Shown piece after piece: positions 28,559 through 64,000 of a stretch of DNA of 64,000 nucleotides. The position numbers and the translations under genes are program-made. The stretch is from the NCBI GenBank assembly GCA_950097015.1, contig CATNEN010000030.1:1674001-1738000 (forward strand), written 5' to 3'. Numbering within the stretch: position 1 is the first letter of the stretch; the number at the start of each line of letters is the position of its first letter. Under the pieces are notes generated by a model, which searched no databases, was not told where the DNA came from, and was given only the letters and a program-made list of their open reading frames with translations. Origin of the DNA: Macrostomum hystrix. Taxonomy: Eukaryota > Animalia > Platyhelminthes.

Positions 28559-31500
28559 TCAGTTCGAGTCGGCGCGGCCTGGCTCCTCCGTCCTAAGGTC
28601 GAGCGCAGCCCGGAGCTCTTCCAGACGTCTAAGCAGAGCGACGCCCTCCGGACTGAACGCATCCTCGTCGAGGTGGAGCCCGGAGTAGGCCAGGCGGCCG
28701 CGCAGTTTCCTCAGCGTCACTGATTGGTAATACAAATAGAACAGGTGCACGAAGTTGCGCGTGTTCTGAGCCAGCACGTCTAGCAGGGAGCGGCTCGGGG
28801 GCGCGCGCCCGATGAGACGCCGGCGAAGAGTGCCGAGCAGCCATGCCAGGAGGTTGCGGCCCTCCAGCAGAAGGTTGAGCGGCGCGGGCAGAGGCGAGCG
28901 CTTCGAGAACTCCCGGCTGAGGTCGTAACGCTCGAACAGCCACAAGGACTTGGACTCGGAGTCCACCATGTCTATTGTCTTGCTGAACATGGCCACGATG
29001 ACGTTAAGCAGTAGCACCTGCACTATGACTATGTAGATCACCATGAGCACATAGGGAACCAGCACATTGCCTGGAAAGCCTACGCACTTGTCAGCGACGA
29101 CAGCCTCTGTAGCCAGCTGCGTGGACACATTTCCGCCCGATGGCGCGTCGCATTCCTTTTTGAGATCGTCCAGGCCGTACTCACCTATTGGAGTAAGGTG
29201 CTAAGTAGCCAACTATGTGTCTTTGCCCATCTACCTCAGCTCCCAAAGTCAGTGTCCCTACTCCAGCTCCCTAAGTCAGTGTCCCTACTCCAGCTCCCTA
29301 AGTCAGTGTCCCTACTCCAGCTCCCTAAGTCAGTATCCCTACTCCAGCTCCCTAAATCAGTGTCCCTACTCCAGCTCACTAAGTCTGTGTCCCTTGTTAA
29401 GTTCAGTTGTTCGTTAATCTAGATGCTAATCTGTAAATCAGTTTTTTTCTGGTGAGTCAACTAGATCTGAGCCAGATCTGAATTCAGTGAGCAGAATCAA
29501 GGACTGCTCACCAACAATGGTATAGAATGTCCTGTGAAACATCTCCACCATGATCTCGCTAGTTGGAATCTCATTGATACGGCCCTGGCTGTAGAACTTG
29601 GCGTTTGGCCATAGAAGAGCGTGGAAGGTTGTGCCGAAGCCCACCATGATGACAACGAGGAATGTACAGGAATGGTATGAAGTCCTTCCTGATCATCAGT
29701 GACAGCATCTTCAGCTTGACGCCAACTGATTCCAGCACCACGGAGATGTATAGAATGCGGATCCAGAAGATCAGAGTGGTGATGACGATCAGCACGTAGC
29801 TGACGTCTCCCCAGCTTTTGCCGTGCTCACTCAGCAGGCCGCCCAGCATCAGTAAGTGTTGCGCCTCCATCTGCCTGGCGGCGAATGCCAAGAAGCCGCA
29901 GGCGATCGCCACGAGATCGATGGCGTTCCAGCCGTCGCTGAGATAAACAGCCAGTGTCTCATGTCGACGGGCGGACACAATTTCGCGAAGCTCTTCGACC
30001 AGGACGCCGAGCAGCGTCAGGTAGCAAAACACCTCCGTCGGGCTGGCGTCGCCCTGTAGATTCGAGAACAGAATTGAGGATAGAAAGCATTTTTAGTAGA
30101 AGAAATTGTTATTAGTTGTTTTTATTGTTATTATTAGAGCTTATTAGTTGTAAGGCCACAAAAATCGGCAACACATCACACACTCGTAATTTGGAATTGA
30201 GCATTTCAGCCTCCTTGCTCCTAAATTTGTTGGGAGCTGAGTCCTTGTCTCTATAAAAAAAATCCACCAGCCACTAACCTGGAAGTCGTGCAGAATCATG
30301 TACGACAACAGGCCGATGAACAGAAAACTGGCGACCGCATGTAGGCGAAACTTGACGCACGGCGTGTTGTAGAAGAGCAGCAGCTCGCTGCCGAACTCGT
30401 TCACTCGCTGAAACAGACGGCGCCGGCGCGCCTCTAGGCCGTAGTCGTGTCGTTGACGTCCACGTCCTGCCACCTGGCTGTCCGAAGACAGCAGACGAAG
30501 CGCCTCCGGACAGCTACCCGGATGCTCCGTGGGCCCAGAGTCATTGAGCACAGACTCAAGGAAGACTCGCGCTCCCGGTCCTCGAAAGCGACGCAGCAGA
30601 ACCGGAAGGCAGAGCATCAGTGGTGGCAGGAAGCCCGCTAGGATCACCAGCTCGCGCAGGACAGCGCTCTGGAAGTTGAAGAAGTCGCCGTACCAGTTCT
30701 TCTCCGTTGCTAGCTCAACAATGTCCAGCTTGATGAAAGTTCCCGCGCCGCCGCGCGCTGATAAGTCCAGGATGGTGTAATTTGCATAGTGCGGCAGCGG
30801 CATGCTTACGTAGCTGATTGTGAGGCAATTTCCCGGCGAGTTATCCACCTCTTTCACCTGCTTAATCACCTTGACGGCCATCGCCTCACAGTCTTCGGCG
30901 ATGCGGCCTGCCTTGTCAGCAAAGACATCTTCAATGTCGCGACGTCTCGCCAAGGAGCGTAGTAGAGTGGCAGACAAGATAGCCAGCGGCACCAGGTCGA
31001 ACTCTTCCTGCTGCAGCAGGATGGGAGCCAGGCGGGGCCGGCCGCTCAGAATCGACCACAGCACCAGCGACTGGGCCGGATCTCTCAGTGGTCTCTTGAG
31101 GCACCAGTTGTCACCGCCGCGACGTTCGCCAAAATCAAAAAGCAGCGGTCCTGCTCGCAAACTTCCAGTAGGTTGTCAGCTCAGCCAGCAGCTTGTTCAG
31201 CCTCGCGAACGATATCGACCCGCCGCCATCGCTGCAGCACTGCTTTACGAGCAGCTCGCGGACGCCAGCCTTCTGTTTGCGCAGCGTCTTAGCGTAGAGT
31301 TTATCGATTGCCACCTCCAACTGGCGAGACAGAGCCGTCCACAGGTGCCGGTGCTTAACTAAGCGTCGCAGAAGCGGCAAGTCTTCGGTGAAGAGCACGA
31401 GCTGGCACAGGTGCCAAGCGATGCGACCGAGCAGGCCGCTGGACTCGAGATTGCAGGCTAGTCCGGCTTCGAAGGCATCGATCAGGCCGTCAATAAGCTG

Positions 31501-32387
31501 GTCGGCGTCAACCTTCCGTCGTGAGGCGGCCAGTTCCAGACGAGAGAGCTTCAGTTGCCGCTGTTTCTTCGCCTCCTCCTTTTCTTGAGCCAGCGACTCG
31601 GCTTCATCAATTGCCTCAGATGTTACGGCAGAGCCTCCGATGCCGCCGTCGATAAGCAGTAGCTGACGAACAAACTCGCGTCCTTCAATGGATGTCACCA
31701 TCCCGAGTGTGTCCTGACCGCTGTTGAAGTGGCGAAGCCGTCTCATGAGGTGCCGACCGAGGCAGTCGATGCCGGATGTGTCGGGGCCTTGGAGCAGCAG
31801 GTCGACCGGAGTTTGGCCATGGAAGTCGGCCAGTGAGAAGTCCGCACCGTGGCACAGCAGCTGGCCGAAAAGATCGTGGTTCTCGCAGGAGACAGCGATG
31901 TGCAAGCAGGTGCTGCCGTTGCTGTTGCGGCTGTTAACCAAGGACGTTTTGGCCCGCATTAGCAGGTCGGCAACGCGGCCGCACTCCGTGTAGCAGGCGA
32001 TGTGCAGCGCGTTGTCACCGCTGGCATCGCAGAGCGCAGGATCGGCGCCACATCGAAGCAGCTCTCGCGTCACACCTGCGCCCCGCTCCGACGCCGCCGC
32101 TGCCAGGTGAAGCGGCCGATCTCCGAAGGCATTCTGTTGGTCCGGATCAGGCGCCGAAGTCCAGCAGAAGCTCGGCGCACTCGGTCAAACCGGCTGCGGC
32201 ACACTGCATGCAGAGCCGAATCGCCGTATGCGTTCGGTGCGTCAACAGCACCTGGGCGGACAGCGCCAGCAAGCAGGAGCAGCGCTTGACGCAGTCGATC
32301 CGGTGAATTTTCGCTCACGGCGGCGTGTAACTGGGCCACTGGTGTGGCATTGGTTTCAGTGCTGTCTGCAATGGAGGACTCCGGCAT
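28559..32387 (-). CDS. TRPM-type cation channel with ~5 N-terminal ankyrin repeats (1090 aa after removing four single-base insertions)
   Basis: Exons 32387-30279, 30053-29512, 29184-28559; total 3277 nt, minus 4 = 3273 in frame. ANK motifs DSALH, DRPLHLAA, DNALHIAC, STCLHIAV. MHR4-like LVLWSILSGR..LAILSATLLRSLA..NWYG. Pre-S1 FYNTPCVKF; S2-S3 GWNAIDL; S6/TRP helix LLNVIVAMF..LWLFERYDL..PLPAPLNLL. Could be a pseudogene if the indels are real. Confidence 0.85.
29235..29392. repeat. 27-bp intronic minisatellite (TRP intron 2)
   Basis: Unit cctactccagctccctaagtcagtgtc. Confidence 0.9.
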
Positions 32388-35730: not shown

Positions 35731-37843
35731 CTACATCCAGCCACAGAAGGCGCTACCGTTGTTTGCCGCGGCCGATTCGCCGATGCGTTCGTCACTCTGA
35801 ACCTTCTTCAGAGAGGCCAGCTGGTCAGGCGTTGGCCAATAGGCGCCACCGTAGCCGGGAGTGATGGGGCTGACAGGAGTGTCGGCTGAGTAACGGCGCT
35901 GCTCAGCCAGGCCGCCAAAGAACAGCGCGCTGTTCCACAGGCGTCTGGGCCGCTCCGGCTCCGGCCAAAGACAGCGCGCGTCCTGCAGCTGCAGCTTCTG
36001 TGGCTGCGGTTGGTTCTGACTAGCCTGGCACTGATCCTCCAATGTCAGGGAGTCGCTGAGGGCGCCAGCTAGGTCATCAACACCGGCTGGTGTTACACTG
36101 ACAGTCGGAGGCAGATCTGTCTTCACCTGGCGCACCTGATGGAAATCGGCCACCAGTCTAAGCGCCTCAGCTGAGCGGGGAAGGCCGGGCTCCAGCCAAA
36201 GGCCCGGACACCGCATAGCAACATACTCGGAGATAAGCTGCTTGGCAAACTGCACCCTTTCGCGATTGCCGCTGATGGTGAAGCAGGTGCGCAGGCCAGG
36301 CTGTTTCTCCTGCTTACGTGGGGTGGCGATATGCGTGTCAGACAGCTGCTGCACCCAGCGAATGGTCTGGCCGGAGGCGCCAACAATCAGGCCGACCTTG
36401 TCCTGCTCCACCCAGAGTCGCTCCTCAACCCGGGTGGGCTCAGTGCGGGTCTGTCGCTCCTGCTGCACGCGGGTGAAATGCTCGCTCATCTGCTGCAGGA
36501 TGTGGATCGCCTGTGGGATTAGATTAAACACTCAATTTGATTTTCTGCTGCGAATTAGTTGATGAATCGAATTACAGTTATTTGATACAAATAGGTGACT
36601 CACCTCAGCAACTTTATCTGGCACTCCGGTGACCTCAAATACTGGAGGCTCATCTCTGGTGGGTGTCTTGACCCACACCTTTCAAGTGCTCACGGATTTG
36701 CTTGATTCGAAGACCTGCAAATGGAGAGTGAAGTATGAAAATGAGTTATTATGACTCAAGAAGCCTAGCTACGAGTAGATACATAAAAATAAAGCATTGT
36801 AGTGTTTAGCAGTTTATAACCCAGGGAGAACTATTAATAAAAACACTGCACCATAACATTTTTTTGTAAATAATTAATTACCTTAAACATAGGTGTATGC
36901 ATAGTAGTTTTGTCTTTTAACTAAGATTTTATACAAATAAGTTAAAAAAATATGTATGCTATTTATTTGCATAATTGTTACCACTGATTCATAAATACAC
37001 ATTTTGTTACAAAGTAGACGTAAAAAATGTATATATTTAAAATAATTGCTACTAAAATTTTGATTACGAATTGGACCTACATTATAATTATAACTAAATA
37101 TCTAACCAAGTTCTATTATAAAACTAAAGTTTTGAATAGTATTTAAACATTATTATCTAAGAAGTATCAGGAGTTGGCTAACTGCAAAGTTAAAAGAAAA
37201 CATAAAAAGAAAAATGTAAATTAAATTAAATATTAAATTTTATTAGGCAACATATCATATATATTTACTGAAATGAAAAAACTTACCATTCTTTCCAACA
37301 ATCTCTGCCACATGATCAGATGATGGAACTTGAATGCGCTCAGTAATGGTAGCATGCTTTTTGTTTTGGGAAACAGAAGCTTGCATCAGCCTTTGGAACA
37401 AATCCCTGGACCTGTTCTCAAAAGTAGCTAGTCGCAGGCGACTGTTTAAATCAGAGCTCATTGACATTTGTTCAATGGCTGATGGCGCACTTGCTGTAGA
37501 CTGTGAAGCAGATGTGTATTCAGAGAAGTGATCAAAGCTTTGAATATTGGCATCAGCAAAAGCTTCGGTGCCTTCTGTTCTTGTGGACAGTCCGCATCCA
37601 AGAATCGGCCGCCATGACATGGTGTCGCCAGTCTCGGACACCCGGCTGCTACTTGACTGCGTTGTTGATCTCTGGTTGGCTATCAAGCTTAGAAGTGACT
37701 CTGGATCCAACTTCTCCATCTTCGGTAAGTTGAGAGTGGGTAGAACGCGAAAAAGGTAGTCCGTTAGAGAAGTTCTCCGTTGTTTGATCCAAAAGACTTT
37801 CGCTCTTGAAGTCACGATGGTACTCCACGTCAACGTTCGACAT
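35731..37843 (-). CDS. MEX3: MEX-3-family tandem-KH RNA-binding protein without RING finger; start uncertain; one +1 frameshift in exon 2
   Basis: Exon 1 ends at 37287 (ITERIQVPSSDHVAEIVGKNG). Exon 2 36714-36604 (LRIKQIREHL/KVWVKTPTRDEPPVFEVTG) is 111 nt where 110 is expected. Exon 3 36510-35731 (AEH-like SEHF, KH2 VGLIVGASGQTIRWVQQLSDTHIATP). Start is either ATG 37843 (needing another +1 correction) or a downstream ATG such as MEKLD. Confidence 0.85.
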
Positions 37844-42907: not shown

Positions 42908-50998
<8,091 letters not shown>

Positions 50999-53342: not shown

Positions 53343-56300
53343 CTACTGCGCTGCCGGGTGCTGCCGTGGCTCGCCGTCCTCGTCGTAGGCGTCCAAGAAG
53401 CCCAGATGATGCTCAGCTGCGACCTCCTCAACCACGGCGGGCGCCCCCGAGGACGCGAGCTGGGCGGTGTGGTCGGCCATTGGGGAAGGTCGGGAACAAT
53501 GAGAATTCGAACCGCTCTGCCCCCTTCTCTCACCGGCAGTCTGTCCGTTCCCTCACCTTCCCTCACCGGCAGTCTGTCCGTTCCCTCACCTTCCCTCACC
53601 GGCAGTCTGTCCGTTCCCTCACCTTCCCTCACCGGCAGTCTGCCCGTTCCCTCACCTTCCCTCACCGGCAGTCTGTTCGTTCCCTCACCTTCCCTCACCG
53701 GCAGTCTGCCCGTTCCCTCACCTTCCCTCACCGGCAGTCTGTCCGTTCCCTCACCTTCCCTCACCGGCAGTCTGTCCGTTCCCTCACCTTCCCTCACCGG
53801 CAGTCTGTCCGTTCCCTCACCTTCCCTCACCGGCAGTCTGTCCGTTCCCTCAGGCTAAAGGCAATGGCACAGGCAAGGGCTGCAGGCAATGGCACATCAT
53901 TTGGTGACAGCAGACCTGCAGCCAGCCAGGTGGCAGCTCTGCCGTTCTGCCACGCCTGCGCCCCAAATGAATGTGGCCTCGCCGCGGAATCGAGCTCATG
54001 GATCTTGGCGCTAGAGGCAAACGCGTTAACCGCTCTGCCACTCACCCCCTTAGTCTGCCCCTTCCCCACCTTCCCTCACCGGCAGTCTGCCCCTTTTTGC
54101 CCTTGTTCCGCGGGCTCTTATCTCCCCCAATCGCCACTGACCTCCGGCTGGGACACAGTCAGTCGATAATCCTCCTCGCTGTTCACTGGGCTGGCCTCCC
54201 TATTCTGAGCCTCCAGATTCAGCTGACGAAAAGAGGCCACTCGAGGCATGGACAGAAAGTCGTCATCCTCTGTCAAGTTGTCATGGTGACCGTTTCCATT
54301 GCAGCCGCCGCCTCCGCCGCCACCGCCACCGCCACCGCTGCCACCGCCGCCGCCGCCGCCAAGAACTCTACGTTGCCATTTTCGCTGCCTGTTGAGCTCA
54401 GCCCAGCGCTTCCGCTCCGCCTCCTGTGAGTGGATTGACAGTTAAGTTGAGAAGTGTTCAAAAACAAAGTGATAAGAAAAGGAGGCCGATAAATCGTCTG
54501 ACCTCTTCCTTCTGGTGCTGCACAAGATTCTTCACGTGCTGCAGCAGTTCGTCAATCTTGGACTCCGTGGAATCTTCGTCCTTGGCCGTCAGGCAGAGGG
54601 CTCGGTTCATTGGGAAGAAGTCGTACTTCTCTTCTAAAAGCTGAACACAGCGAGAGAGCAATGCCTGTTAGACAGGACTGATACATGTTAGACAGGACTG
54701 ATACATGTTAGACAGGACTGAAACATGTTAGACAGGACTGAAACATGTTAGACAGGACTGATACATGTTAGACAGGACTGATACATGTTAGACAGGACTG
54801 ATACATGTTAGACAGGACTGATACATGTTAGACAGGACTGATACATGTTAGACAGGACTGATACATGTTAGACAGGACTGAAACATGTTAGACAGGACTG
54901 ATACATGTTAGACAGGACTGATACATGTTAGACAGGACTGATACATGTTAGACAGGACTGATACATGTTAGACAGGACTGATACATGTTAGACAGGACTG
55001 ATACATGTTAGACAGGACTGATACATGTTAGACAGGACTGATACATGTTAGACAGGACTGATACATGTTAGACAGGACTGATACATGTTAGACAGGACTG
55101 AAACATGTTAGACAGGACTGATACATGTTAGACAGGACTGATACATGTTAGACAGGACTGAAACATGTTAGACAGGACTGATACATGTTAGACAGGACTG
55201 ATACATGTTAGACAGGACTGATACACGTTAGACAGGACTGATACATGTTAGACAGGACTGATACATGTTAGACAGGACTGATACATGTTAGACAGCACTG
55301 ATACATTAGACAGGACTGATACATGTTAGACAGGCACTGATACATGTTAGACAGGACTGATACATGTTAGACAGGACTGATACATGTTAGACAGGACTGA
55401 TACATGTTAGACAGGACTGATACATGTTAGACAGGACTGAAACATGTTAGACATGTAAGCAAGCTATCTGCCAGTCTTCACCCACCAGCTTATAGACGTG
55501 CAACTCCAGCGAAGTGTAGTCATTCTTGGCCGTGTCCTGCAGGTGAATGAAGAAGAAGATGTAGGCCCACATGTTGTGCTCGTTGCGTACGTGATAGTCG
55601 AAGCCCTGGCCGTGGTGCTCGAAGTCGTAGTTGCTGCGCGAGCAGATGAAGCAGTTGTCTCGCATGTCCACCTCGGCTGTCCACTTCATGTTGCGCAGCT
55701 CGCTGAATGTGTCCACAATGATGCCGAAGATGATGTTCAGGCCCACGGTGGTGATGAGGATGAAGAACACGATGTGAAAGACAGCCATCCAGAAGTAGGA
55801 ATCGAAGGTTGGCGACTCCTCACGCGGCACCATGTTCTGCGAGGTGCGCGAACTTGGCTAGTTGATTCAATTTCTAAAAACTTCTCAGAGTGTCTAACAG
55901 ATTCTAATTGTGCCTAACGATTTCCTCATGGTCTCATGATTTCCTCATGATTTCCTCATTCCTCATTCTCTTGTAATTTCTTTATTGTCTAACAATATCC
56001 TCCTTTTCTAACAGTTTCCTACGGTGTCTAACAGTTTCCCACAGTGTCTAACAGTTTCCTACGGTGTCTAACAGTTTCCCACAGTGTCTAATAGTTTCCT
56101 GCGGTGTCTAACAGCTTCCTACAGTGTCTAACAGTTTCCTACAGTGTCTAACAGGTTCCTACAGTGTCTAACAGTTTCCTACAGTATCTAACAGTTTCCC
56201 ACAGTGTCTAACAGTTTCCTACAGTATCTAACAGTTTCCTACAGTGTCTAACAGCTTCCCACAGTGTCTAACAGTTTCCCACAGTGTCTAACAGCTTCCT

Positions 56301-59300
56301 ACAGTATCTAACAGCTTCCTACAGTATCTAACAGTTTCTCACAGTGTCTAACAGTTTCCCACAGTGTCTAATAGTTTCCCACAGTGTCTAACAGTTTCCC
56401 ACAGTGTCTAACAGCTTCCCACAGTGTCTAACAGTTTCCCACAGTGTCTAACAGCTTCCCACAGTGTCTAACAGTTTCCCACAGTGTCTAATAGTTTCCC
56501 ACAGTGTCTAACAGTTTCCTACAGTATCTAACAGTTTCCTACAGTGTCTAATAGTTTCCCAGTGTCTAACAGCTTTGCATAGTGTCTAACACTTTCTCAA
56601 TCGTCAAAGGTTTTTGCTAACAATCTGAAATCCAGTAATTATTGTAACGGCCATTGTGTTGCCTAACAGGCTCTGTGTATCTAACAGCAATCCGGCTGTC
56701 TAACGGGCCCCAACCTCGAACAAGTCGCCAATGAGGCCGAAGCGCAGCACGGTCACGAAGCACTGGCTCAGGTCCGAGCAGAACATGAGGCCGCCGAAGC
56801 CGCGGCGCAGTCTGGCGAAGGCCAGCACGGAGAACAGGTACATGATGGCGATGCCCAGCACCGACACCCAGATTAGTGAGAGTCCTGGAACAGTTTAGCA
56901 TGGAATTGACGAAATGAATGCCTTATATTCTACTATAAGTAGTAGTCTACTAGTAGCGTCTTATTTCGTGGAATGGGGAGTCTATCCTAATTTCTGTCCC
57001 ATGCTGCTGTTGGTACCAATTTTACAACTGGGTGAACTGAAGCACTTGGGTCTTGCTCAAGGAATCAAATTGCTTCTTCTGGGCTGAGATTCGAACTACC
57101 GTCCTCTTAGCCAGAAGATACTGAAGCTCTAGCCACTTGGCTACTAGCTCCCTTAATAGTCAGCAAAGACCATAGACCATGAGCAGAAAGAGGCCAAGAA
57201 TCCGGAAAGACTCGCTCACTCCCTAAATAGTCAGTTTAGACCATAGACTGTGAGTAGAGAGGCAAAATATCCGGAAAGACACGCTTACCGTTCATGGTGA
57301 CAGCCTGAATGACTCCCTGCAGCAGCTGGTTGTTGTTGACCATATTCAGCAGGTGGAAGGCGAAGAAGTAGGGACAGTAGAAGGTGCCAGCAAATGAGCA
57401 GGCGGCAAACACCAGGTAGTAAAGTGTGGCGATGGAGAAGAGGTTAACGGCCAGCTTGTTGCCACCGGCGCTGCCGCGGCCGTCGCGCGATTCAGCAGGG
57501 TCGTCCTCGTCGGCGGCCTTGACACGGCGGAGGCTGCGCAGACGGTCGCGAAGTCGACGCAAATTCGGCGGCTCCGGATGATTGGCGACGAAGAATGTGA
57601 GCAGGATGATGATAGACAGGATGTCCATTGTGTAGGCGAATGCGTCTTTCCACATCTCCAGGTTCGGGTACTGCGGCTTCCAGCGGGCTGTTTCGCTGGT
57701 AGGTTTTATAAATTAATTTAAATAATGACAGAAATTGCTGCTTCACAGTTTTCTTCTGATTCGATTTTGCTGGCTTCATTTTATCCACAATAGTTCACAT
57801 TCGATTTCGATTTGATCTAAACAAGATCATTTTTGATTGGTAAAAACTTTACCAGATTCGATTGAACTAAACTAGATCAATTTAATTGGTCAGGACTAAA
57901 TCAATTTGATTGGTCCTGACTAGATCGATTTAAATTGGTCCAGACTAGATCGGTTTTTATTGGTCCAGACTAGATCGATTTTAATTGGTCCAGACTAGAT
58001 CGGTTTTAATTGGTCTCAGCTAGACCGCTTATAATTGGTCCAAACTAGATAGATTTTAATTGGTCCAGAATAGATAGCTTTCTGTGGTCCAGACTAGACA
58101 AGTTTTAATTCGTTAGGCTCAAATCTTTCAAGCGCTCGAGCGTACTCACTTAGAAGGAACTGAGAACAGGCTGATGTCCGCCAGCATTGTGGGCTCATTG
58201 GTGGCCTCTAGGCCAATCAGCATGATCAGGTTGATGATGACAGCAGTCAGTGTGGCTGCGTGGTTCCAGATCAGCCACAGTCGAGTCAGCAGGATGGTGA
58301 ATGGATTCGACAACACCTTTTTCTGGTAGTGAATGTCCTTCAGGATGGCCTTAGTCCAGTCCATGAAGTCGCGAATTTTCGTACTAGGCGAAGATCTGTC
58401 CACATTCCATTTGAGCTTCTCCTTGAGCTCTTCGCGGAGCACATTCTGCGGGAGTTGGGAATTGACAGAATGTACTTGCGGCTTTCTTTTTAGCTCGCGA
58501 GTCTGTTACGCTTGCCTTATTCCTGACCCGGAAGTGGACCTTCTGCAGGTTGTCATTCTTCAGCATCTCGATTGTCATTGCGTTCTTTTTGAAGAATTTG
58601 AACGCCTTCTGCTGAGCCTCGCTGATCTGCAATTCTGGATTTGGGAGGGGCGGAGACAGCTCGAGTCACTCTCTGAAGAATTCCCGGTGGATGAAAGATG
58701 AGAAGAGGATGGAGGGGATTGAAGAGAAGAGGATGTGAAAGAAGATAGGCGAGAAGTGCATGGGAGAGAAGTGCACGGGAGAGAACTGCATGGGAGAGAA
58801 GTGCACGGGAGAGAACTGCATGGGAGAGAAGTGCATGGGAGAGAATTGCATGGGAGAGAAGTGCATGGGAGAGAAGTGCATGGGAGAGAAGTGCATGGGA
58901 GAGAAGTGCATGGGAGAGAAGTGCATGGGAGAGAAGTTCATGGGAGAGAAGTGCATGGGAGAGAAGTGCATGGGAGAGAAGTTCATGGGAGAGAACTGCA
59001 TGGGAGAGAAGTGCATGATGGGAAGATGATGCGCTTAAATTATTTTTAATGGAATTGAGACAAGTACGTCTTGAGTTGGCAGATAGGCCCAAGACAGTAT
59101 AGACCTATTTTGACATGTACGAGTTACCATAGCGAGGTAATGAAATATAATTAAAATTACTATTAAATTTTCTCATAATAAAACGACAGTGCAGTGTTTG
59201 AGGAATGCTGATTGATAATGTTTTATCAATGTCGCTACAGTTAACTTTATTCATTTTATTTTAACTTTGTCTTCTATTGCTGCCTAAAGCTACTCATTGG

Positions 59301-62300
59301 ATTTCTCATAACTCATATTATTTACTTCTTCTCTTAAGCACATTGTCTTATGCATAGCAGGATAGAATATAACCGTGAGAAAGTTAATTTAATACATTAG
59401 GCATAAAATAATTGTTAATACACATGTCACAGTAGAACAAAGAGTAACTGGGCAAGACTTAGTCAAAACGGAAAACTCCAACCATAATACTAAAGGCTAG
59501 GCGAGATTGACAAATTAAAATTACCTCGTCCGTACGGGTCTGAGTCTGCAACAACGGTGGGGCAGGAATGTTAAAATGGGGAGTCATAGGTGGGATTAGG
59601 TAAGGATGCACACAGAAGAGGTTAGAGGAGGCACAACAATGACGCAAGCTATGTACTTGAATTAGTCAGGTTTGAATTGGCTAGGTCGTGAATGCTGATC
59701 CATTATTTGTGTGGTCTACCTTTCTTTCCCATTGTCGGGTCGATGTCGTACAGGCGAGCGAGGATGACATAGAAGGAGAAGCCAACGTCGCACATGGCTT
59801 CTTTCAGCTCGCGGTCGTCCTCTTTTTTCTAAAATCAAATCAGATTAGCTATCCGTATAGCTCATCAAAGGACAGGTTGGATGTCTCATCAAAGGACAGG
59901 TTGGATGTCTCATCAAAGGACAGGTTGGGTGTCTCATCAAAGGACAGGTTGGATGTCTCATCAAAGGACAGGTTGGGTGTCTCATCAAAGGACAGGTTGG
60001 ATGTCTCATCAAAGGACAGGTTGGGTGTCTCATCAAAGGACAGGTTGGGTGTCTCATCAAAGGACAGGTTGGATGTCTCATCAAAGGACAGGTTGGATGT
60101 CCCATCAAAGGACAGGTTGGGTGTCTCATCAAAGGACAGGTTGGGTGTCTCATCAAAGGACAGGTTGGGATGTCTCATCAAAGGACAGGTTGGGTGTCTC
60201 ATCAAAGGACAGGTTGGGTGTCTCATCAAAGGACAGGTTGGATGTCTCATCAAAGGACAGGTTGGGTGTCTCATCAAAGGACAGGTTGGATGTCTCATCA
60301 AAGGACAGGTTGGGTGTCTCATCAAAGGACAGGTTGGATGTCTCATCAAAGGACAGGTTGGGATGTCTCATCAAAGGACAGGTTGGGTGTCTCATCAAAG
60401 GACAGGTTGGATGTCTCATCAAAGGACAGGTTGGGTGTCTCATCAAAGGACAGGTTGGGTGTCTCATCAAAGGACAGGTTGGATGTCTCATCAAAGGACA
60501 GGTTGGATGTCTCATCAAAGGACAGGTTGGGTGTCTCATCAAAGGACAGGTTGGGTGTCTCATCAAAGGACAGGTTGGGTGTCTCATCAAAGGACAGGTT
60601 GGAGGTTGGATGTCTCATCAAAGGACAGGTTGGGTGTCTCATCAAAGGACAGGTTGGGTGTTTCATCAAAGGACAGGTTGGTGTCTCATCAAAGGACAGG
60701 TTGGGATGTCTCATCAAAGGACAGGTTGGATGTCTCATCAAAGGACAGGTTGGGTGTCTCATCAAAGGACAGGTTGGGTGTCTCATCAAAGGACAGGTTG
60801 GGTGTCCCATCAAAGGACAGGTTGGATGTCTCATCAAAGGACAGGTTGGATGTCTCATCAAAGGACAGGTTGGGTGTCTCATCAAAGGACAGGTTGGGTG
60901 TCTCATCAAAGGACAGGTTGGATGTCTCATCAAAGGACAGGTTGGATGTCTCATCAAAGGACAGGTCGGGTGTCTCATCAAAGGACAGGTTGGATGTCTC
61001 ATCAAAGGACAGGTTGGATGTCTCATCAAAGGACAGGTTGGATGTCTCATCAAAGGACAGGTTGGATGTCTCATCAAAGGACAGGTTGGGTGTCTCATCA
61101 AAGGACAGGTTGGGTGTCTCATCAAAGGACAGGTTGGGTGTCTCATCAAAGGACAGGTTGGGTGTCTCATCAAAGGACAGGTTGGGTGTCTCATCAAAGG
61201 ACAGGTTGGGTGTCTCATCAAAGGACAGGTTGGGTGTCTCATCAAAGGACAGGTTGGGTGTCTCATCAAAGGACAGGTTGGGTGTCTCATCAAAGGACAG
61301 GTTGGGTGTCTCATCAAAGGACAGGTTGGATGTCTCATCAAAGGACAGGTTGGGTGTCTCATCAAAGGACAGGTTGGATGTCTCATCAAAGGACAGGTTG
61401 GGTGTCTCATCAAAGGACAGGTTGGATGTCTCATCAAAGGACAGGTTGGGTGTCTCATCAAAGGACAGGTTGGGTGTCTCATCAAAGGACAGGTTGGGTG
61501 TCCCATCAAAAGACAGGTGATTTCAGGTGAGGTCAATTGTCGATGACTTCAGCCAGACGCCCACGCTACAGTGCTAGGCAGTGGCTCACAAAAAGTCGCA
61601 CAAGGAAGCCGCCATCTTTGCTAGTCCGCTGCTGGGCCTCATAGCACTCGGACATTGCCCGGTAGAGCGCTCCCTTGTCCAGGGTGTCCTTCACCTCCCT
61701 GGCAATCACGAGCGCTTCGGGTGAGTTCTCCTCGATGAGCGATATCACCAGGTTGGCAATGGTCTGGCGCAGCTGAACCACCTGTTGAGGCTCGCAATTT
61801 TCAAAGTCCGAGCTGCGCAGAATGAAGTTAATGTAGTCAATGATTTTGTTGTCGTACACTGTGGCGCGATTCTCTTGGTTGCCCTGAAATGTTTTTTTTG
61901 GTATTTCCAGAGTTCTCAGTTTTGGCCTAGCAACAAATATACGAGCTAGAAAATGCGCTTTTACTCGCATTAACAGTAGAAAGACCACACCATTTCCCCT
62001 GGAGAAAGATTTCAAACACCCACTGCCTACTTCACCATAGCTTCCAAACCGAATGACCGATGACCGTGAAAGTCCACCATTTGGATAAAAAATCTTTCGC
62101 CTTCTATGAAAGGAAAACTTTGAAAGTCGTCCGACGTCGGCATCGCCGAGATATTCAGCAATTCTTGTCGAAGACCCCGGTGACAAGGACAACTATGCAG
62201 ATGTTTTGATTCTGGAGTCGTTTCATCGGATGGAGCGGAAAAGTTTAGCCTGCGTTCTGGATTTTCATGACGGTTGGTTGAATATTTTGGGAGATACAGA

Positions 62301-63717
62301 ACAAAGATAATGTGGGTGTTTGAAATCCCCCCTCTGGTCTTTGTTCTGATAAAAGGGCGTCGAAAAAGATAATCGAAATAGCTCTCGGGCTTGCTCTAGT
62401 AGTGTCTAAGACCGTAACAGGGTACAATTATACTTGTCGCGGTTGTTGTTTTTGTTGTCTTTGGACAATTTTTGCTGTTTTTGGACAATTTTTGCTGTCT
62501 TTGGCCAGTTTTCGGACTTGGCTCTAAAATAAGTTCTTGCTCTTCTGAAAGTTTAAAGTCAGCGGTGTACTTTTAAGAAGAGATTTTCGTTGAGCACGGC
62601 ACTCACAGCGCAGAACTCGTTGACCGTTGAGAACAGCTGGATGAGCAAGTCGATGGTGTCCCCGTTGATATTAGAGTAGGCAACATTGATAAACTGGGAT
62701 ACCTCGGCAACTATGTTGAACGACTTGATATTGTCCGGCTGTTCCCTGAGGTAGTTCTGCAGGCCAAAGTGTTGGCCGTCGCAGATGCTGGCTAGCACCT
62801 TCAGCACGAGGGCGATGTAGCCGTCGTCCTTCATGGAGATGGTCTCGTCATCTTCTTGTGCTTTGCCAGCTACATTGTTGTCCTATAGTTGAAGGCGCAT
62901 TGTTTGGATCATGGGGGCTCTGACCAGGCATAGGTGACAACTATGACAGAGAAGTTCTCGCCAATCTGCTCGTCTGAATTCCCACATTGATAATGATAGA
63001 TGAAGACCCATTTAAGACAGATTATCCAAAGAAATCAGCTCACAGGCTCAGCACCAGCCTCGGCTCCGGCCGAGTCGTCGTCGAGCAGACTCTGCGCCAT
63101 CGGCTCCTTTCCGAGCCCATTGGCGAATGCCACCTTCTTGGCGCCGCTTCCGCTGCTCTTCCTGCAGCCGCTGCCAGCCGCCTCCTTGCCCGGCGTGTGG
63201 CCTCCAGACTCCTTGTGCCGCTTGGTGAGGAGGGACTGCGACTGCATCTTAGTGAGGCTCACCCGCCTCTGTGGAGAACGCACATTTTCCCATATTTTTT
63301 TTGACTTGGGTCGCATAAAACTAATCTATATCGATAAATTTAAACTCACCGTCAGGTCATTGTTGGCCTGCTCGATTTTCATCTCAATGCGGTACTGCTT
63401 GATTTGCTGAGGGCAAAAAATCAACGGATGATTTTGATAGTCAATCAAGTCAGTTTAAAAACAGACACGACAGCTTAATCGGGTTGCCATCCCACCTGTA
63501 AGGCCTTCACCCCCAGAGTCATTGTGGCGCGCAGATTCTGAGCCTGCGACTTGGCCTCGGACTGGCGCGCCTTCTGCTGCGAGATCAGCAGCCGGCGCTC
63601 TTTTATGTTGGCGGTGGACATTTGCAGGCGATTGCGAACGGCGTAGAAAAACACTTCCTCCTTTGTGTGCAGGAAGTAGTTGAGCATGCTCTCCTGCGGA
63701 TGAGGTTCGTTGGTCAG
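53343..63717 (-). CDS. ITPR: Inositol 1,4,5-trisphosphate receptor-like Ca2+ release channel, divergent; C-terminal ~1020 aa only, 5' part outside window
   Basis: Exons 63717-63496, 63406-63350, 63268-63044, 62882-62607, 61883-61590, 59828-59720, 58634-58516, 58445-58150, 57695-57289, 56884-56715, 55836-55486, 54640-54503, 54423-54142, 53459-53343; total 3063 nt, in frame. RIH-associated motif LASICDGQHFGLQNYLREQPDNIKSFNIV; LNIIFGIIVDTFSELR; CFIC..H..EHNMWAY. The last two exons are least certain. Confidence 0.9.
53525..53852. repeat. 33-bp intronic minisatellite (ITPR last intron)
   Basis: Plus unit ccttccctcaccggcagtctgtccgttccctca; sense strand carries CG|GTGAGG and AG|GTGAGG; a further partial unit at 54068-54090. 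Confidence 0.92.
53876..53952 (-). other. ~77-bp dispersed hairpin element, copy 2
   Basis: Minus strand tggcagaacggcagagctgccacctggctggctgcaggtctgctgtcaccaaatgatgtgccattgcctgcagccct, similar to 22428-22504. Confidence 0.7.
54665..55452. repeat. 20-bp intronic minisatellite (ITPR), ~39 copies
   Basis: Plus unit tgttagacaggactgataca. Confidence 0.96.
56005..56590. repeat. 20-bp intronic minisatellite (ITPR)
   Basis: Plus unit acagtgtctaacagtttccc. Confidence 0.94.
56930..57152 (-). mobile_element. tRNA-derived SINE, possibly CORE-like, in an ITPR intron
   Basis: Minus strand A-box tagccaagtgg, B-box gttcgaatc, then ccttgagcaag and ttcacccagttgtaaaattgg, which resemble conserved SINE body motifs (recalled, not searched). 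Confidence 0.6.
57880..58100. repeat. Degenerate ~26-bp intronic repeat (ITPR)
   Basis: Recurring ttttaattggtccagactagatcg. Confidence 0.8.
58755..59020. repeat. 15-bp intronic minisatellite (ITPR)
   Basis: Unit gcatgggagagaagt. Confidence 0.93.
59865..61518. repeat. 24-bp intronic minisatellite (ITPR), ~68 copies
   Basis: Unit tctcatcaaaggacaggttgggtg with tggatg variant. Confidence 0.96.
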
Positions 63718-63945: not shown

Positions 63946-64000
63946 GAGACCATAGTACTATAAAAGGACTGAAGCCCAGGTCAGAAAAATGGGCAAACAC

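What the first reader, a model, noticed from the sequence alone, without database searches (positions are those of the whole stretch)
56715..56884. IP3R-like channel with a collapsed selectivity filter
Seen: the pore reads CSDLSQCFVTVLRFGLIGDLFE, fully inside one exon, and the luminal loop before it is very short (RLRRGFGGLMF). Established: IP3R has ..TVLSHGLRSGGGVGDVL.. and the GGGxGD motif is conserved in IP3R and RyR. The five residues RSGGG are missing here, while S6, the C2H2 zinc site and the reading frame are intact. Inference: a distinct IP3R-like class with altered selectivity or gating, or a non-conducting or modulatory subunit.
Basis: partly seen in the sequence, partly recalled or inferred. 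Interest (0 to 1): 0.8.

Follow-up and report, generated by a model that had tools for sequence, protein, structure and literature searches.

The report
Flatworm IP3R-B channel, glycine-free pore
This exon encodes the pore of an intact flatworm gene from an old, almost unstudied invertebrate branch of the IP3-receptor/ryanodine-receptor family, in which the usual glycine-rich ion filter is replaced by a conserved acidic motif; it is the branch's normal signature, not a one-off.

Summary
A minus-strand exon at 56715-56884 encodes S5, a short luminal loop, the pore helix and ...RFGLIGDLFE, and splices in frame to the S6/zinc-finger exon.

The reading "five residues RSGGG deleted" does not hold. 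The spacing from the pore helix to S6 is 52 residues, the modal value in canonical channels too. MAFFT, HMMER and two AlphaFold models all indicate a two-residue contraction. The core GG(V/I)GD becomes GD(L/M)F(E/D), and the filter acid is kept.

The gene is not a lineage oddity. R-[YF]-G-L-I-G-D-[LM]-F-[ED] is nearly invariant in 54 distinct proteins from molluscs, annelids, nemerteans, a brachiopod and Macrostomum. A 70-sequence tree puts the window gene (77% identical to a Macrostomum lignano protein) in a holozoan clade separate from canonical IP3R, which includes Schistosoma, and from RyR. In that clade sponges and choanoflagellates keep GGGLGE, while placozoans and bilaterians lack the glycines. 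The clade holds Capsaspora's non-A homologue, so it is most likely the "IP3R-B" of Alzayady et al. 2015.

The gene is under purifying selection (dN/dS 0.115) and I found no alternative pore exon. Function is untested. An earlier follow-up of this scan reached the same reading for a paralogue on another piece of this genome.

Verdict: a new member of a known but uncharacterised kind.

The parts
56715..56884 (-). Pore exon: S5, short luminal loop, pore helix (CSDLSQCFVTVLRFG) and the filter motif
   Evidence: Searches give the translation and splice sites; tblastn with M. lignano P0152, 75% identity; this is the only match in the window to any S5-pore query.
56715..56738 (-). Filter motif G-L-I-G-D-L-F-E, where canonical channels have G-L-R-S-G-G-G-V-G-D
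   Evidence: Read directly. Alignments. Motif conservation.
55486..55836 (-). S6 / C2H2 zinc finger / linker exon (NMVPREES...FGIIVDTF...CFIC...HVRNEH...YKL)
   Evidence: IP3R3 E 7.8e-21, RyR2 1.5e-17. Ion_trans; splice sites; dN/dS 0.09.
57289..57697 (-). Upstream transmembrane exon (S3-S4 and the S4-S5 linker), ending ...QAVTMN + G
   Evidence: The helices are seen in the model of the orthologue.
58182..58662 (-). Two exons (58516-58662 and 58182-58448) encoding the pre-S1 region and S1-S2
   Evidence: 71-83% identity to M. lignano P0152.
59721..59822 (-). Small exon of the ARM3/bridge region
61605..61883 (-). ARM3 exon downstream of RIH_assoc
   Evidence: 83% identity to P0152.
62607..62849 (-). 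RIH_assoc exon. It holds the counterparts of the cytosolic Ca2+-site residues: ICDGQH (D at hIP3R3 E1882) and VNEFCA (E at E1946).
   Evidence: PF08454, E 9e-17; alignment of the orthologue to IP3R3; 97.5% identity to P0152.
63496..63696 (-). Most upstream exon of the gene that lies in the window. The N-terminal two thirds of the gene lie beyond position 64000.
54503..54640 (-). C-terminal exon (LLEEKYDFFPMNRALCL... and the start of the coiled coil). Weaker matches to the tail at 54139-54426 and 53355-53543.

Best explanation
SHOWN. The window holds the C-terminal third of an intact, selectively constrained gene for an IP3R/RyR-superfamily channel of a macrostomid-like flatworm. The gene belongs to a holozoan clade separate from canonical IP3R (IP3R-A) and from RyR. 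Within that clade, Corallochytrium, choanoflagellates and sponges keep a GGGLGE filter, while placozoan and bilaterian members have none. The window gene sits in a spiralian subgroup (called G1 here) whose filter R-[YF]-G-L-I-G-D-[LM]-F-[ED] is almost invariant. Relative to canonical channels, two residues are lost and two glycines of the GG(V/I)GD core are replaced, G to D and G to F. The first Gly, the central hydrophobic residue and the terminal acid are kept.

INFERRED. (1) The clade is the 'IP3R-B' of Alzayady et al. 2015. (2) The protein still forms a tetrameric, Ca2+-sensitive intracellular cation channel. The channel fold, the S6 gate residues, the zinc finger and the acidic residues of the cytosolic Ca2+ site are all kept, and the filter motif itself is under strong constraint, which argues against a dead pore. 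(3) In place of a glycine backbone-carbonyl filter, the mouth of the pore would be lined by two rings of acidic side chains (the Asp of GD and the Glu/Asp of LFE) on a shorter, partly helical segment, giving a conductance and selectivity different from IP3R/RyR. (4) Gating by IP3 is doubtful. The whole clade has lost T266, T267, G268, R269 and Y567 of the IP3-binding core. Its Capsaspora member shares that pattern and is reported not to bind IP3.
For: Gene structure and frame.
Family: Pfam RIH_assoc and Ion_trans; IP3R3 and RyR2 hits.
Relatives and their filters.
Spacing of 52 residues.
Two-residue gap.
Motif invariance in 54 distinct sequences.
Careful ML tree (70 rows x 790 columns): non-A holozoan clade 100/100, glycine-free clade 100/99, G1 100/100, window + M. 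lignano 100/100, IP3R-A including Schistosoma 100/99; only 2 changes of filter state.
Capsaspora CAOG_04510 (XP_004347257.1) lies in the clade, whereas Capsaspora IP3R-A is XP_004347577.1.
Purifying selection against the M. lignano locus: dN/dS 0.115 overall, 0.27 for the pore exon; only exons align at the DNA level.
No alternative pore exon.
Intronless-length transcript contigs of other species encode the motif.
AlphaFold model of the orthologue's transmembrane domain, pLDDT 86.3, matching IP3R1, IP3R3 and RyR1 at E 1e-15; sponge control.
Ca2+-site residues D, E and N at hIP3R3 E1882, E1946 and T2581.
IP3-binding core pattern.
IP3R-B reported as unable to bind IP3: PMC9113742, citing Alzayady 2015.
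Against: There are no functional data for any metazoan member. I could not list any RNA-seq run for this genome, so splicing here rests on homology, on the M. lignano gene model and on an earlier scan note. The N-terminus lies outside the window, so ligand-binding statements come from orthologues. The AlphaFold models are monomers without tetramer context, and I could not read their coordinates, so which side chains face the pore is inferred from secondary structure only. R265, K508 and R511, the three residues classically essential for IP3 binding, are conserved, so IP3 binding is not excluded. In my tree RyR is not sister to this clade, unlike the published IP3R-B/RyR scheme, although the RyR branch is very long. 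The 2015 paper itself could not be read.
Confidence: 0.65

Rival explanations
1. Non-conducting or modulatory subunit. The glycine-free loop cannot pass ions, and the protein acts as a Ca2+/ligand sensor, a scaffold or a dominant-negative partner of other release channels.
For: Both glycines that give the canonical filter its extended backbone conformation are replaced by Asp and the bulky Phe. The Capsaspora member of the clade is reported to give no Ca2+ release (abstract of Alzayady 2015 as I recall it; secondary citation). The sister subgroups G2 and G3 carry quite different loop sequences.
Against: The ten-residue motif is nearly invariant across five phyla, while the residues just after it vary freely. 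That is hard to explain for a loop without a pore function. The S6 gate, the filter acid and the Ca2+-site acids are all retained. Species keep two or three paralogues, each with its own fixed motif.
Confidence: 0.2
2. One reading: a five-residue deletion (RSGGG) created a collapsed filter, and a distinct class is discovered in this genome.
For: LIGD can be laid on GVGD by eye. AlphaFold does show a shorter coil after the pore helix.
Against: The pore-helix-to-S6 spacing equals the canonical 52. Two aligners give a 2-residue gap with E aligned to the filter Asp. The graded series runs sponge GLLSGGGLGEAL, Trichoplax GFLSGFHEAL, hemichordate GLIDGLQEYL, G1 GLIGDLFE. The class is widespread and already annotated in many genomes.
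Confidence: 0.05
3. Artefact or decay: a pseudogene, or an exon that is swapped in the mRNA for one encoding GGGxGD.
For: No RNA run could be listed for this genome.
Against: There are 769 spliced codons without a stop. dN/dS is 0.115 with dS about 1.2 against M. lignano, and introns are unalignable. No second pore-like exon and no GGGxG[DE] occurs in any frame of the gene. Transcript-length contigs in other species encode the motif. An earlier follow-up reports the motif in the mRNA of the paralogue (not re-tested here).
Confidence: 0.03
4. It is simply the flatworm orthologue of canonical IP3R (IP3R-A) with a drifted filter.
For: NCBI names its relatives 'inositol 1,4,5-trisphosphate receptor type 1/2/3-like'. 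The N-terminal profile scores higher with IP3R1 (254 bits) than with RyR2 (119 bits).
Against: The canonical flatworm IP3R (Schistosoma japonicum, GGGIGD) groups with arthropod IP3Rs in another clade at 100/99 support. S. mansoni also has a GGGXGD IP3R (PMC3194816).
Confidence: 0.02

Closest known systems
IP3R-B (Alzayady et al. 2015, Mol Biol Evol 32:2236), with Capsaspora CO.IP3R-B as the tested member
   Same: The architecture is IP3R-like: orthologues carry Pfam PF08709, PF02815, PF01365, PF08454 and PF00520, are 2.5-2.9 thousand residues long, and have no SPRY or RyR repeats. The gene sits in the same clade as Capsaspora's non-A homologue and is absent from the vertebrate sequences seen here. 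It shares the same altered IP3-binding-core pattern.
   Different: The paper could not be read here, so equating the clades is an inference. The Capsaspora loop (GLENGLASVG) differs from the G1 motif and lost its glycines independently (2 changes). No metazoan member has been tested. RyR was not sister to the clade in my tree.
Canonical IP3 receptors (IP3R-A: ITPR1-3, insect and schistosome IP3R)
   Same: Shared features are the six-TM channel fold, the pore helix with CxxxxxC, the S6 sequence FGIIVDTF, the C2H2 zinc finger, RIH_assoc, the acidic residues of the cytosolic Ca2+ site, and R265/K508/R511 of the binding core.
   Different: The filter is GD(L/M)F(E/D) instead of GG(V/I)GD and two residues shorter. 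The luminal S5-P loop is very short. T266, T267, G268, R269 and Y567 are changed. It falls in a separate clade.
Ryanodine receptors
   Same: They share the short S5-P loop and the same pore-domain fold (Foldseek TMq 0.62). phmmer aligns the pore region end to end.
   Different: There are no SPRY domains, RyR repeats or EF-hand region, and the size is about half. The filter lacks the glycine run. It falls in a separate clade.
Side-chain 'GD' filters of TRPP/TRPML channels (PKD2 L-G-D, TRPML1 N-G-D-D-M-F). Recalled from memory: a lead, not a test.
   Same: A Gly-Asp directly follows the pore helix, followed by hydrophobic Met/Leu-Phe and a short second helical turn in the AlphaFold model. This suggests acid side chains rather than backbone carbonyls at the mouth of the pore.
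   Different: There is no homology beyond the general six-TM tetrameric cation-channel fold. The resemblance is a few residues long and was not tested structurally.

Membership tests
IP3R/RyR superfamily | RIH_assoc domain followed by a six-TM channel domain with a pore helix, an S6 '..FG.I.D.F' and a C-terminal C2H2 zinc finger | tested here: met
   Pfam PF08454 E 9e-17 and PF00520. PDB IP3R3 7.8e-21 and RyR2 1.5e-17. The model of the orthologue matches IP3R1, IP3R3 and RyR1 transmembrane domains at E 1e-15.
Canonical IP3R (IP3R-A) | Selectivity filter GGGxGD (GGVGD core) | tested here: not met
   The window reads GLIGDLFE. No GGGxG[DE] occurs in any frame of the gene.
Canonical IP3R (IP3R-A) | Groups with vertebrate, arthropod and schistosome IP3Rs in a phylogeny | tested here: not met
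   The IP3R-A clade (ants, copepod, Schistosoma) has 100/99 support. The window lies in another clade with 100/100 support. No vertebrate IP3R sequence was in the tree.
Canonical IP3R (IP3R-A) | The eleven IP3-coordinating residues of the binding core (R265, T266, T267, G268, R269, R504, K508, R511, Y567, R568, K569) | tested here: inconclusive
   The N-terminus is outside the window. In G1 orthologues six are kept (R265, K at 504, K508, R511, R568, K569) and five are changed. The M. lignano model shows the alpha-domain pattern only.
IP3R-B (Alzayady 2015) | Holozoan IP3R-like clade distinct from IP3R-A that contains Capsaspora's second homologue and is missing from vertebrates | tested here: met
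   Capsaspora CAOG_04510 lies in the clade. It is not the IP3R-A accession XP_004347577.1. No vertebrate sequence appeared among 270 relatives. Absence from vertebrates was not searched for exhaustively.
IP3R-B (Alzayady 2015) | Sister relation to RyR | tested here: inconclusive
   In the unrooted tree RyR (branch length 2.5) lies on the other side of a 98/89 split from fungi plus this clade. Only three fish RyRs were included.
IP3R-B (Alzayady 2015) | No IP3 binding and no IP3-evoked Ca2+ release (shown for the Capsaspora protein) | not testable with these tools
   Only a secondary citation is available (PMC9113742). This needs a binding and flux assay.
Ryanodine receptor | About 5000 residues with SPRY domains, RyR repeats and RR_TM4-6 | tested here: not met
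   Orthologues are 2.5-2.9 thousand residues long and lack PF00622, PF02026 and PF06459, which the fish RyRs carry.

The most novel reading that the evidence does not exclude
The glycine-free IP3R-B channels of placozoans and bilaterians, with the spiralian G-D-[LM]-F-[ED] type as the best-conserved form, would be a third functional class of animal intracellular channels. They would be Ca2+-sensing but not IP3-gated. Their side-chain (Asp/Glu ring) filter would have evolved from the glycine filter still present in sponges, and their ion selectivity or conductance would be unlike both IP3R and RyR.
Probability: 0.3. Interest if true: 0.75.

Novelty: new member of a known kind. Interest (0 to 1): 0.45.

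Why it matters
Textbooks and reviews state that invertebrates have one IP3R and one RyR (for example PMC9113742). The data here show that many invertebrate phyla also carry one to several paralogues of a third, IP3R-like channel lineage. Its pore signature differs from the GGGxGD motif held to define the superfamily (PMC3194816).

The motif is fixed over hundreds of millions of years, so it does something. Yet no metazoan member has been expressed or recorded, and the motif strings are absent from the eight million papers searched. Sponge members keep the glycine filter and Trichoplax and hemichordate members show intermediate forms, giving a natural series for asking how a backbone-carbonyl filter can be rebuilt.

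For this particular window the result is more modest. It is one more orthologue, a paralogue of one the scan had already examined.

Tried and rejected
1. RNA evidence. The look-up of sequencing runs (kind rna) listed no run, so read laying was not used and splicing in this species is not shown by reads.

2. Reading Alzayady et al. 2015. The paper is not held by DOI or PMC id. Only secondary citations were available.

3. phmmer of single exons against the PDB. The pore exon alone gave only E 0.8 and the RIH_assoc exon gave nothing. Longer pieces of the M. lignano orthologue were used instead.

4. A strict regular expression for the IP3-binding motifs failed on most proteins. It was replaced by a profile search and mafft --add. 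In one search the beta-domain columns are shifted by two for IP3R-A rows, so I rely on the HMMER alignment for R265-R269.

6. Model coordinates are not readable from scripts. No superposition or pore-radius calculation was therefore possible.

7. Considered and rejected: pseudogene, alternative pore exon, canonical IP3R orthologue, and five-residue deletion (see rivals).
Full report
**1. What is in the sequence.**
The finding lies on the minus strand. Translation of 56703-56894 gives TVPGLSLIWVSVLGIAIMYLFSVLAFARLRRGFGGLMFCSDLSQCFVTVLRFGLIGDLFEVGAR*.
- The acceptor is ttccag|GA. It completes a Gly codon whose first base ends the upstream exon (...ACC ATG AAC G|gtaagc, last base 57289).
- The donor is GAG|GTTGGG after the Glu of GDLFE.
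- The next exon starts after an AG at 55836 in phase 0. It reads NMVPREESPTFDSYFWMAVFHIVFFILITTVGLNIIFGIIVDTFSELRNMKW...NCFICSRSNYDFEHHGQGFDYHVRNEHNMW...YKL.
- This exon matches solved IP3R3 at E 7.8e-21 and RyR2 at 1.5e-17.
- Further upstream exons include a RIH_assoc domain (PF08454, E 9e-17).
- tblastn with Macrostomum lignano proteins shows twelve collinear exon matches from 63696 down to 53355. The annotated M. lignano protein joins the pore exon to the S6 exon at the same point.
- My spliced 769-residue product has no stop.

**2. Is the filter five residues short?**
No.
- I measured the distance from the second Cys of the pore-helix CxxxxxC to the Gly of the S6 motif in all relatives fetched. 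The window has 52 residues, and 52 is also the modal value of channels with a canonical GGGxGD/E.
- MAFFT L-INS-i and G-INS-i on 67 pore regions both place a two-residue gap. They align GLIGDLF--EN with GLRAGGGVGDL.
- phmmer of the M. lignano orthologue against RyR1 does the same: gli..gdlfdn against GVRagGGIGDE.
- In both, the Glu/Asp that ends the motif is the counterpart of the canonical filter Asp. The classical core GG(V/I)GD therefore corresponds to GD(L/M)F(E/D). The first Gly, the middle hydrophobic residue and the acid are kept, and two glycines become Asp and Phe.
- Relatives form a graded series: sponge GLLSGGGLGEAL, Trichoplax GFLSGFHEAL, hemichordates GLIDGLQEYL, this group GLIGDLFE.
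- An AlphaFold2 model of the M. lignano transmembrane domain (pLDDT 86.3) shows the pore helix running to G-L-I, a two-residue coil (G-D), a one-turn helix (L-F-D-N), a loop and then S6.
- A control model of the sponge orthologue (pLDDT 89.7) shows a five-residue coil (S-G-G-G-L) and a turn at G-E-A.

'Collapsed' is thus qualitatively fair, but the contraction is two residues before the acid. It is made up again in the variable loop that follows. These are monomer models, and I could not read their coordinates.

**3. Who else has it.**
- A search of 1.84 billion cluster representatives with the S6 exon gave 3878 hits. The best, at 85% identity, is M. lignano PAA56314.1.
- A word-indexed search with a nemertean relative returned named proteins from many phyla.
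- Their pore loops fall into groups.
  - G1, R-[YF]-G-L-I-G-D-[LM]-F-[ED], occurs in molluscs (two paralogues each), annelids, nemerteans, Lingula and Macrostomum.
  - G2, IHHGFVDSPYTTFE, occurs in molluscs.
  - G3, such as GLIDGLQE or GLIAGIYDYL, occurs in hemichordates, nemerteans, annelids, Lingula, Macrostomum, an acoel and Trichoplax.
  - Sponges, choanoflagellates and Corallochytrium keep GGGLGE.
- In 54 distinct G1 sequences, R, both G and nearly always L, I, D, F and the acid are invariant. The six residues after the motif vary freely.
- Several relatives come from Logan contigs barely longer than their coding sequence: 663 aa on 2154 nt, 2862 aa on 11172 nt, 2786 aa on 8933 nt. These must be transcripts, so the motif is in mRNA in those species.

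**4. Phylogeny.**
I added canonical IP3Rs (three ants, a copepod, Schistosoma japonicum), three fish RyRs, fungal and protist homologues. I then built a careful IQ-TREE tree with LG+C20+F+G4 PMSF on 70 rows and 790 columns.

| Clade | Support (UFboot/SH-aLRT) |
|---|---|
| RyR | 100/100 |
| Metazoan IP3R-A, including Schistosoma | 100/99 |
| Holozoan clade of Corallochytrium, choanoflagellates, Capsaspora CAOG_04510, sponges and all G1-G3 proteins | 100/100 |
| Sponges plus the glycine-free animals | 100/99 |
| Glycine-free clade (Trichoplax, acoel, hemichordates, spiralians) | 100/99 |
| G1 | 100/100 |
| Window plus M. lignano | 100/100 (77% identity over 714 columns) |

- The presence or absence of the glycine run needs only two changes on the tree: one in Capsaspora and one at the base of the placozoan-bilaterian clade.
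- Long branches (Schistosoma, RyR, some protists) make the deep order unsafe. In particular, I cannot say whether RyR is sister to this clade.

**5. Name of the clade.**
- Alzayady et al. 2015 divided the family into IP3R-A and IP3R-B/RyR, with IP3R-B lost in vertebrates. They reported that Capsaspora IP3R-B neither binds IP3 nor releases Ca2+. This is from my memory of the abstract; the paper is not held.
- Two held papers support parts of this. [quoted passage not shown] Arige et al. give XP_004347577.1 as Capsaspora IP3R-A.
- The Capsaspora protein in my clade is XP_004347257.1, which is a different gene.

I therefore call the clade IP3R-B, as an inference.

**6. Is the gene alive, and could splicing restore GGG?**
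- Against the M. lignano locus, only exons align at the DNA level, at 68-88% identity.
- Nei-Gojobori estimates give dN 0.138 and dS 1.195, ratio 0.115 overall. The ratio is 0.27 for the pore exon and 0.09 for the S6 exon.
- A six-frame motif scan and tblastn with nine S5-pore queries, canonical and not, found no second pore-like exon in the window and no GGGxG[DE] in the gene.
- No RNA run could be listed for this genome.
- An earlier follow-up of this scan (s1-363646) on a paralogue with LRYG-LIGD, on another piece of the same genome, reports the motif in mRNA. It reached the same overall reading. I did not re-test its RNA claim.

**7. What it probably does.**

*Retained features.*
- The channel fold is kept (Foldseek to IP3R1, IP3R3 and RyR1: E about 1e-15, TMq 0.6).
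- The S6 sequence, including the hydrophobic gate positions, and the zinc finger are kept.
- The acidic residues of the cytosolic Ca2+-activation site are kept. D stands at hIP3R3 E1882, E at E1946, and N at T2581, whose contact I recall being through the backbone.

*IP3-binding core.* A profile of 17 G1 N-termini aligned to IP3R1 keeps R265, K508, R511, R568 and K569, with K at R504. It has I/V, R/x, x, P and S at T266, T267, G268, R269 and Y567. The same pattern holds in G2, G3, sponges, choanoflagellates and Capsaspora.

*My best reading.* This is a Ca2+-sensitive intracellular cation channel whose pore mouth is lined by Asp and Glu side chains on a shorter, partly helical loop, probably not gated by IP3. 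I give the combined statement about 0.65. The identity part is near 0.9 and the mechanistic part near 0.4. The main rival is a non-conducting or modulatory subunit (0.2). The resemblance of G-D-[LM]-F to the TRPML/PKD2 'GD' filters is from memory and is only a lead.

**8. Known or new?**
- The GGGXGD motif is treated as the family's defining filter (PMC3194816).
- 'IP3R-B' as a whole word occurs in two held papers, both versions of one work.
- The strings RYGLIGD, YGLIGD, GLIGDLFE and GLIGDMF occur in none.
- The lineage is thus named but essentially uncharacterised, and its pore signature appears undescribed in the literature I could search.
- The window gene itself is an orthologue or paralogue of annotated hypothetical proteins of M. 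lignano, and the scan has already examined a paralogue in this genome.

I rate it a new member of a known kind, with interest 0.45.

**9. Limits.**
- The N-terminal two thirds of the gene are outside the window.
- The species is not identified beyond 'closest to Macrostomum lignano'. A dS of about 1.2 means another species or an old paralogue.
- There is no expression data for this locus.
It was left out and not sent elsewhere.

Noticed in passing
window 54666-55453 and 56007-56596: The introns on either side of the S6 exon hold 20-bp minisatellites (39.5 and 29.6 copies, 97% and 89% matches). They share the core CTGTCTAACA but in opposite orientation. Similar TGTTAG(A/G) words also stand just inside the intron after the pore exon's donor (56640-56712).
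   Followed up: partly
window 59861-61518, 58751-59017, 57871-58110: Further intronic tandem arrays lie in the same gene: 24 bp x 69 copies, 15 bp x 18 and 25 bp x 9.7. Much of the intron sequence of this gene is minisatellite DNA.
   Followed up: no
P0003 versus P0002 (M. lignano proteins): P0003 reads RFGFDWRLVRNLVPP where its close paralogue P0002 reads RFGLIGDLFENLVPP. This looks like a short frame slip in that gene model or assembly, right at the filter.
   Followed up: no
window 28559-32387 (-): Long open frames with ankyrin repeats are followed by a TRPM-like channel domain. Not examined here.
   Followed up: no
window about 43000-50500 (+) and 35734-36531 (-): Exons of a MAP-kinase/NLK-like protein kinase lie on the plus strand, interrupted by coding-looking minisatellites. 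A 266-aa KH-domain-like open frame lies on the minus strand.
   Followed up: no
relatives, (P0051, P0053, P0064, P0072, P0075, P0099, P0133): Another set of superfamily members, of unknown taxa, carries GLR[KNE]GD[IV]GE in place of GGGxGD, with a pore-helix-to-S6 spacing of 48-52. This is a second, apparently independent, glycine-poor filter type.
   Followed up: no
P0158, P0159, P0185, P0206: Some nemertean and chiton G1 proteins have 11-18 extra residues inserted directly after the GD[LM]FE motif. The loop just behind the motif therefore tolerates large insertions while the motif does not change.
   Followed up: no
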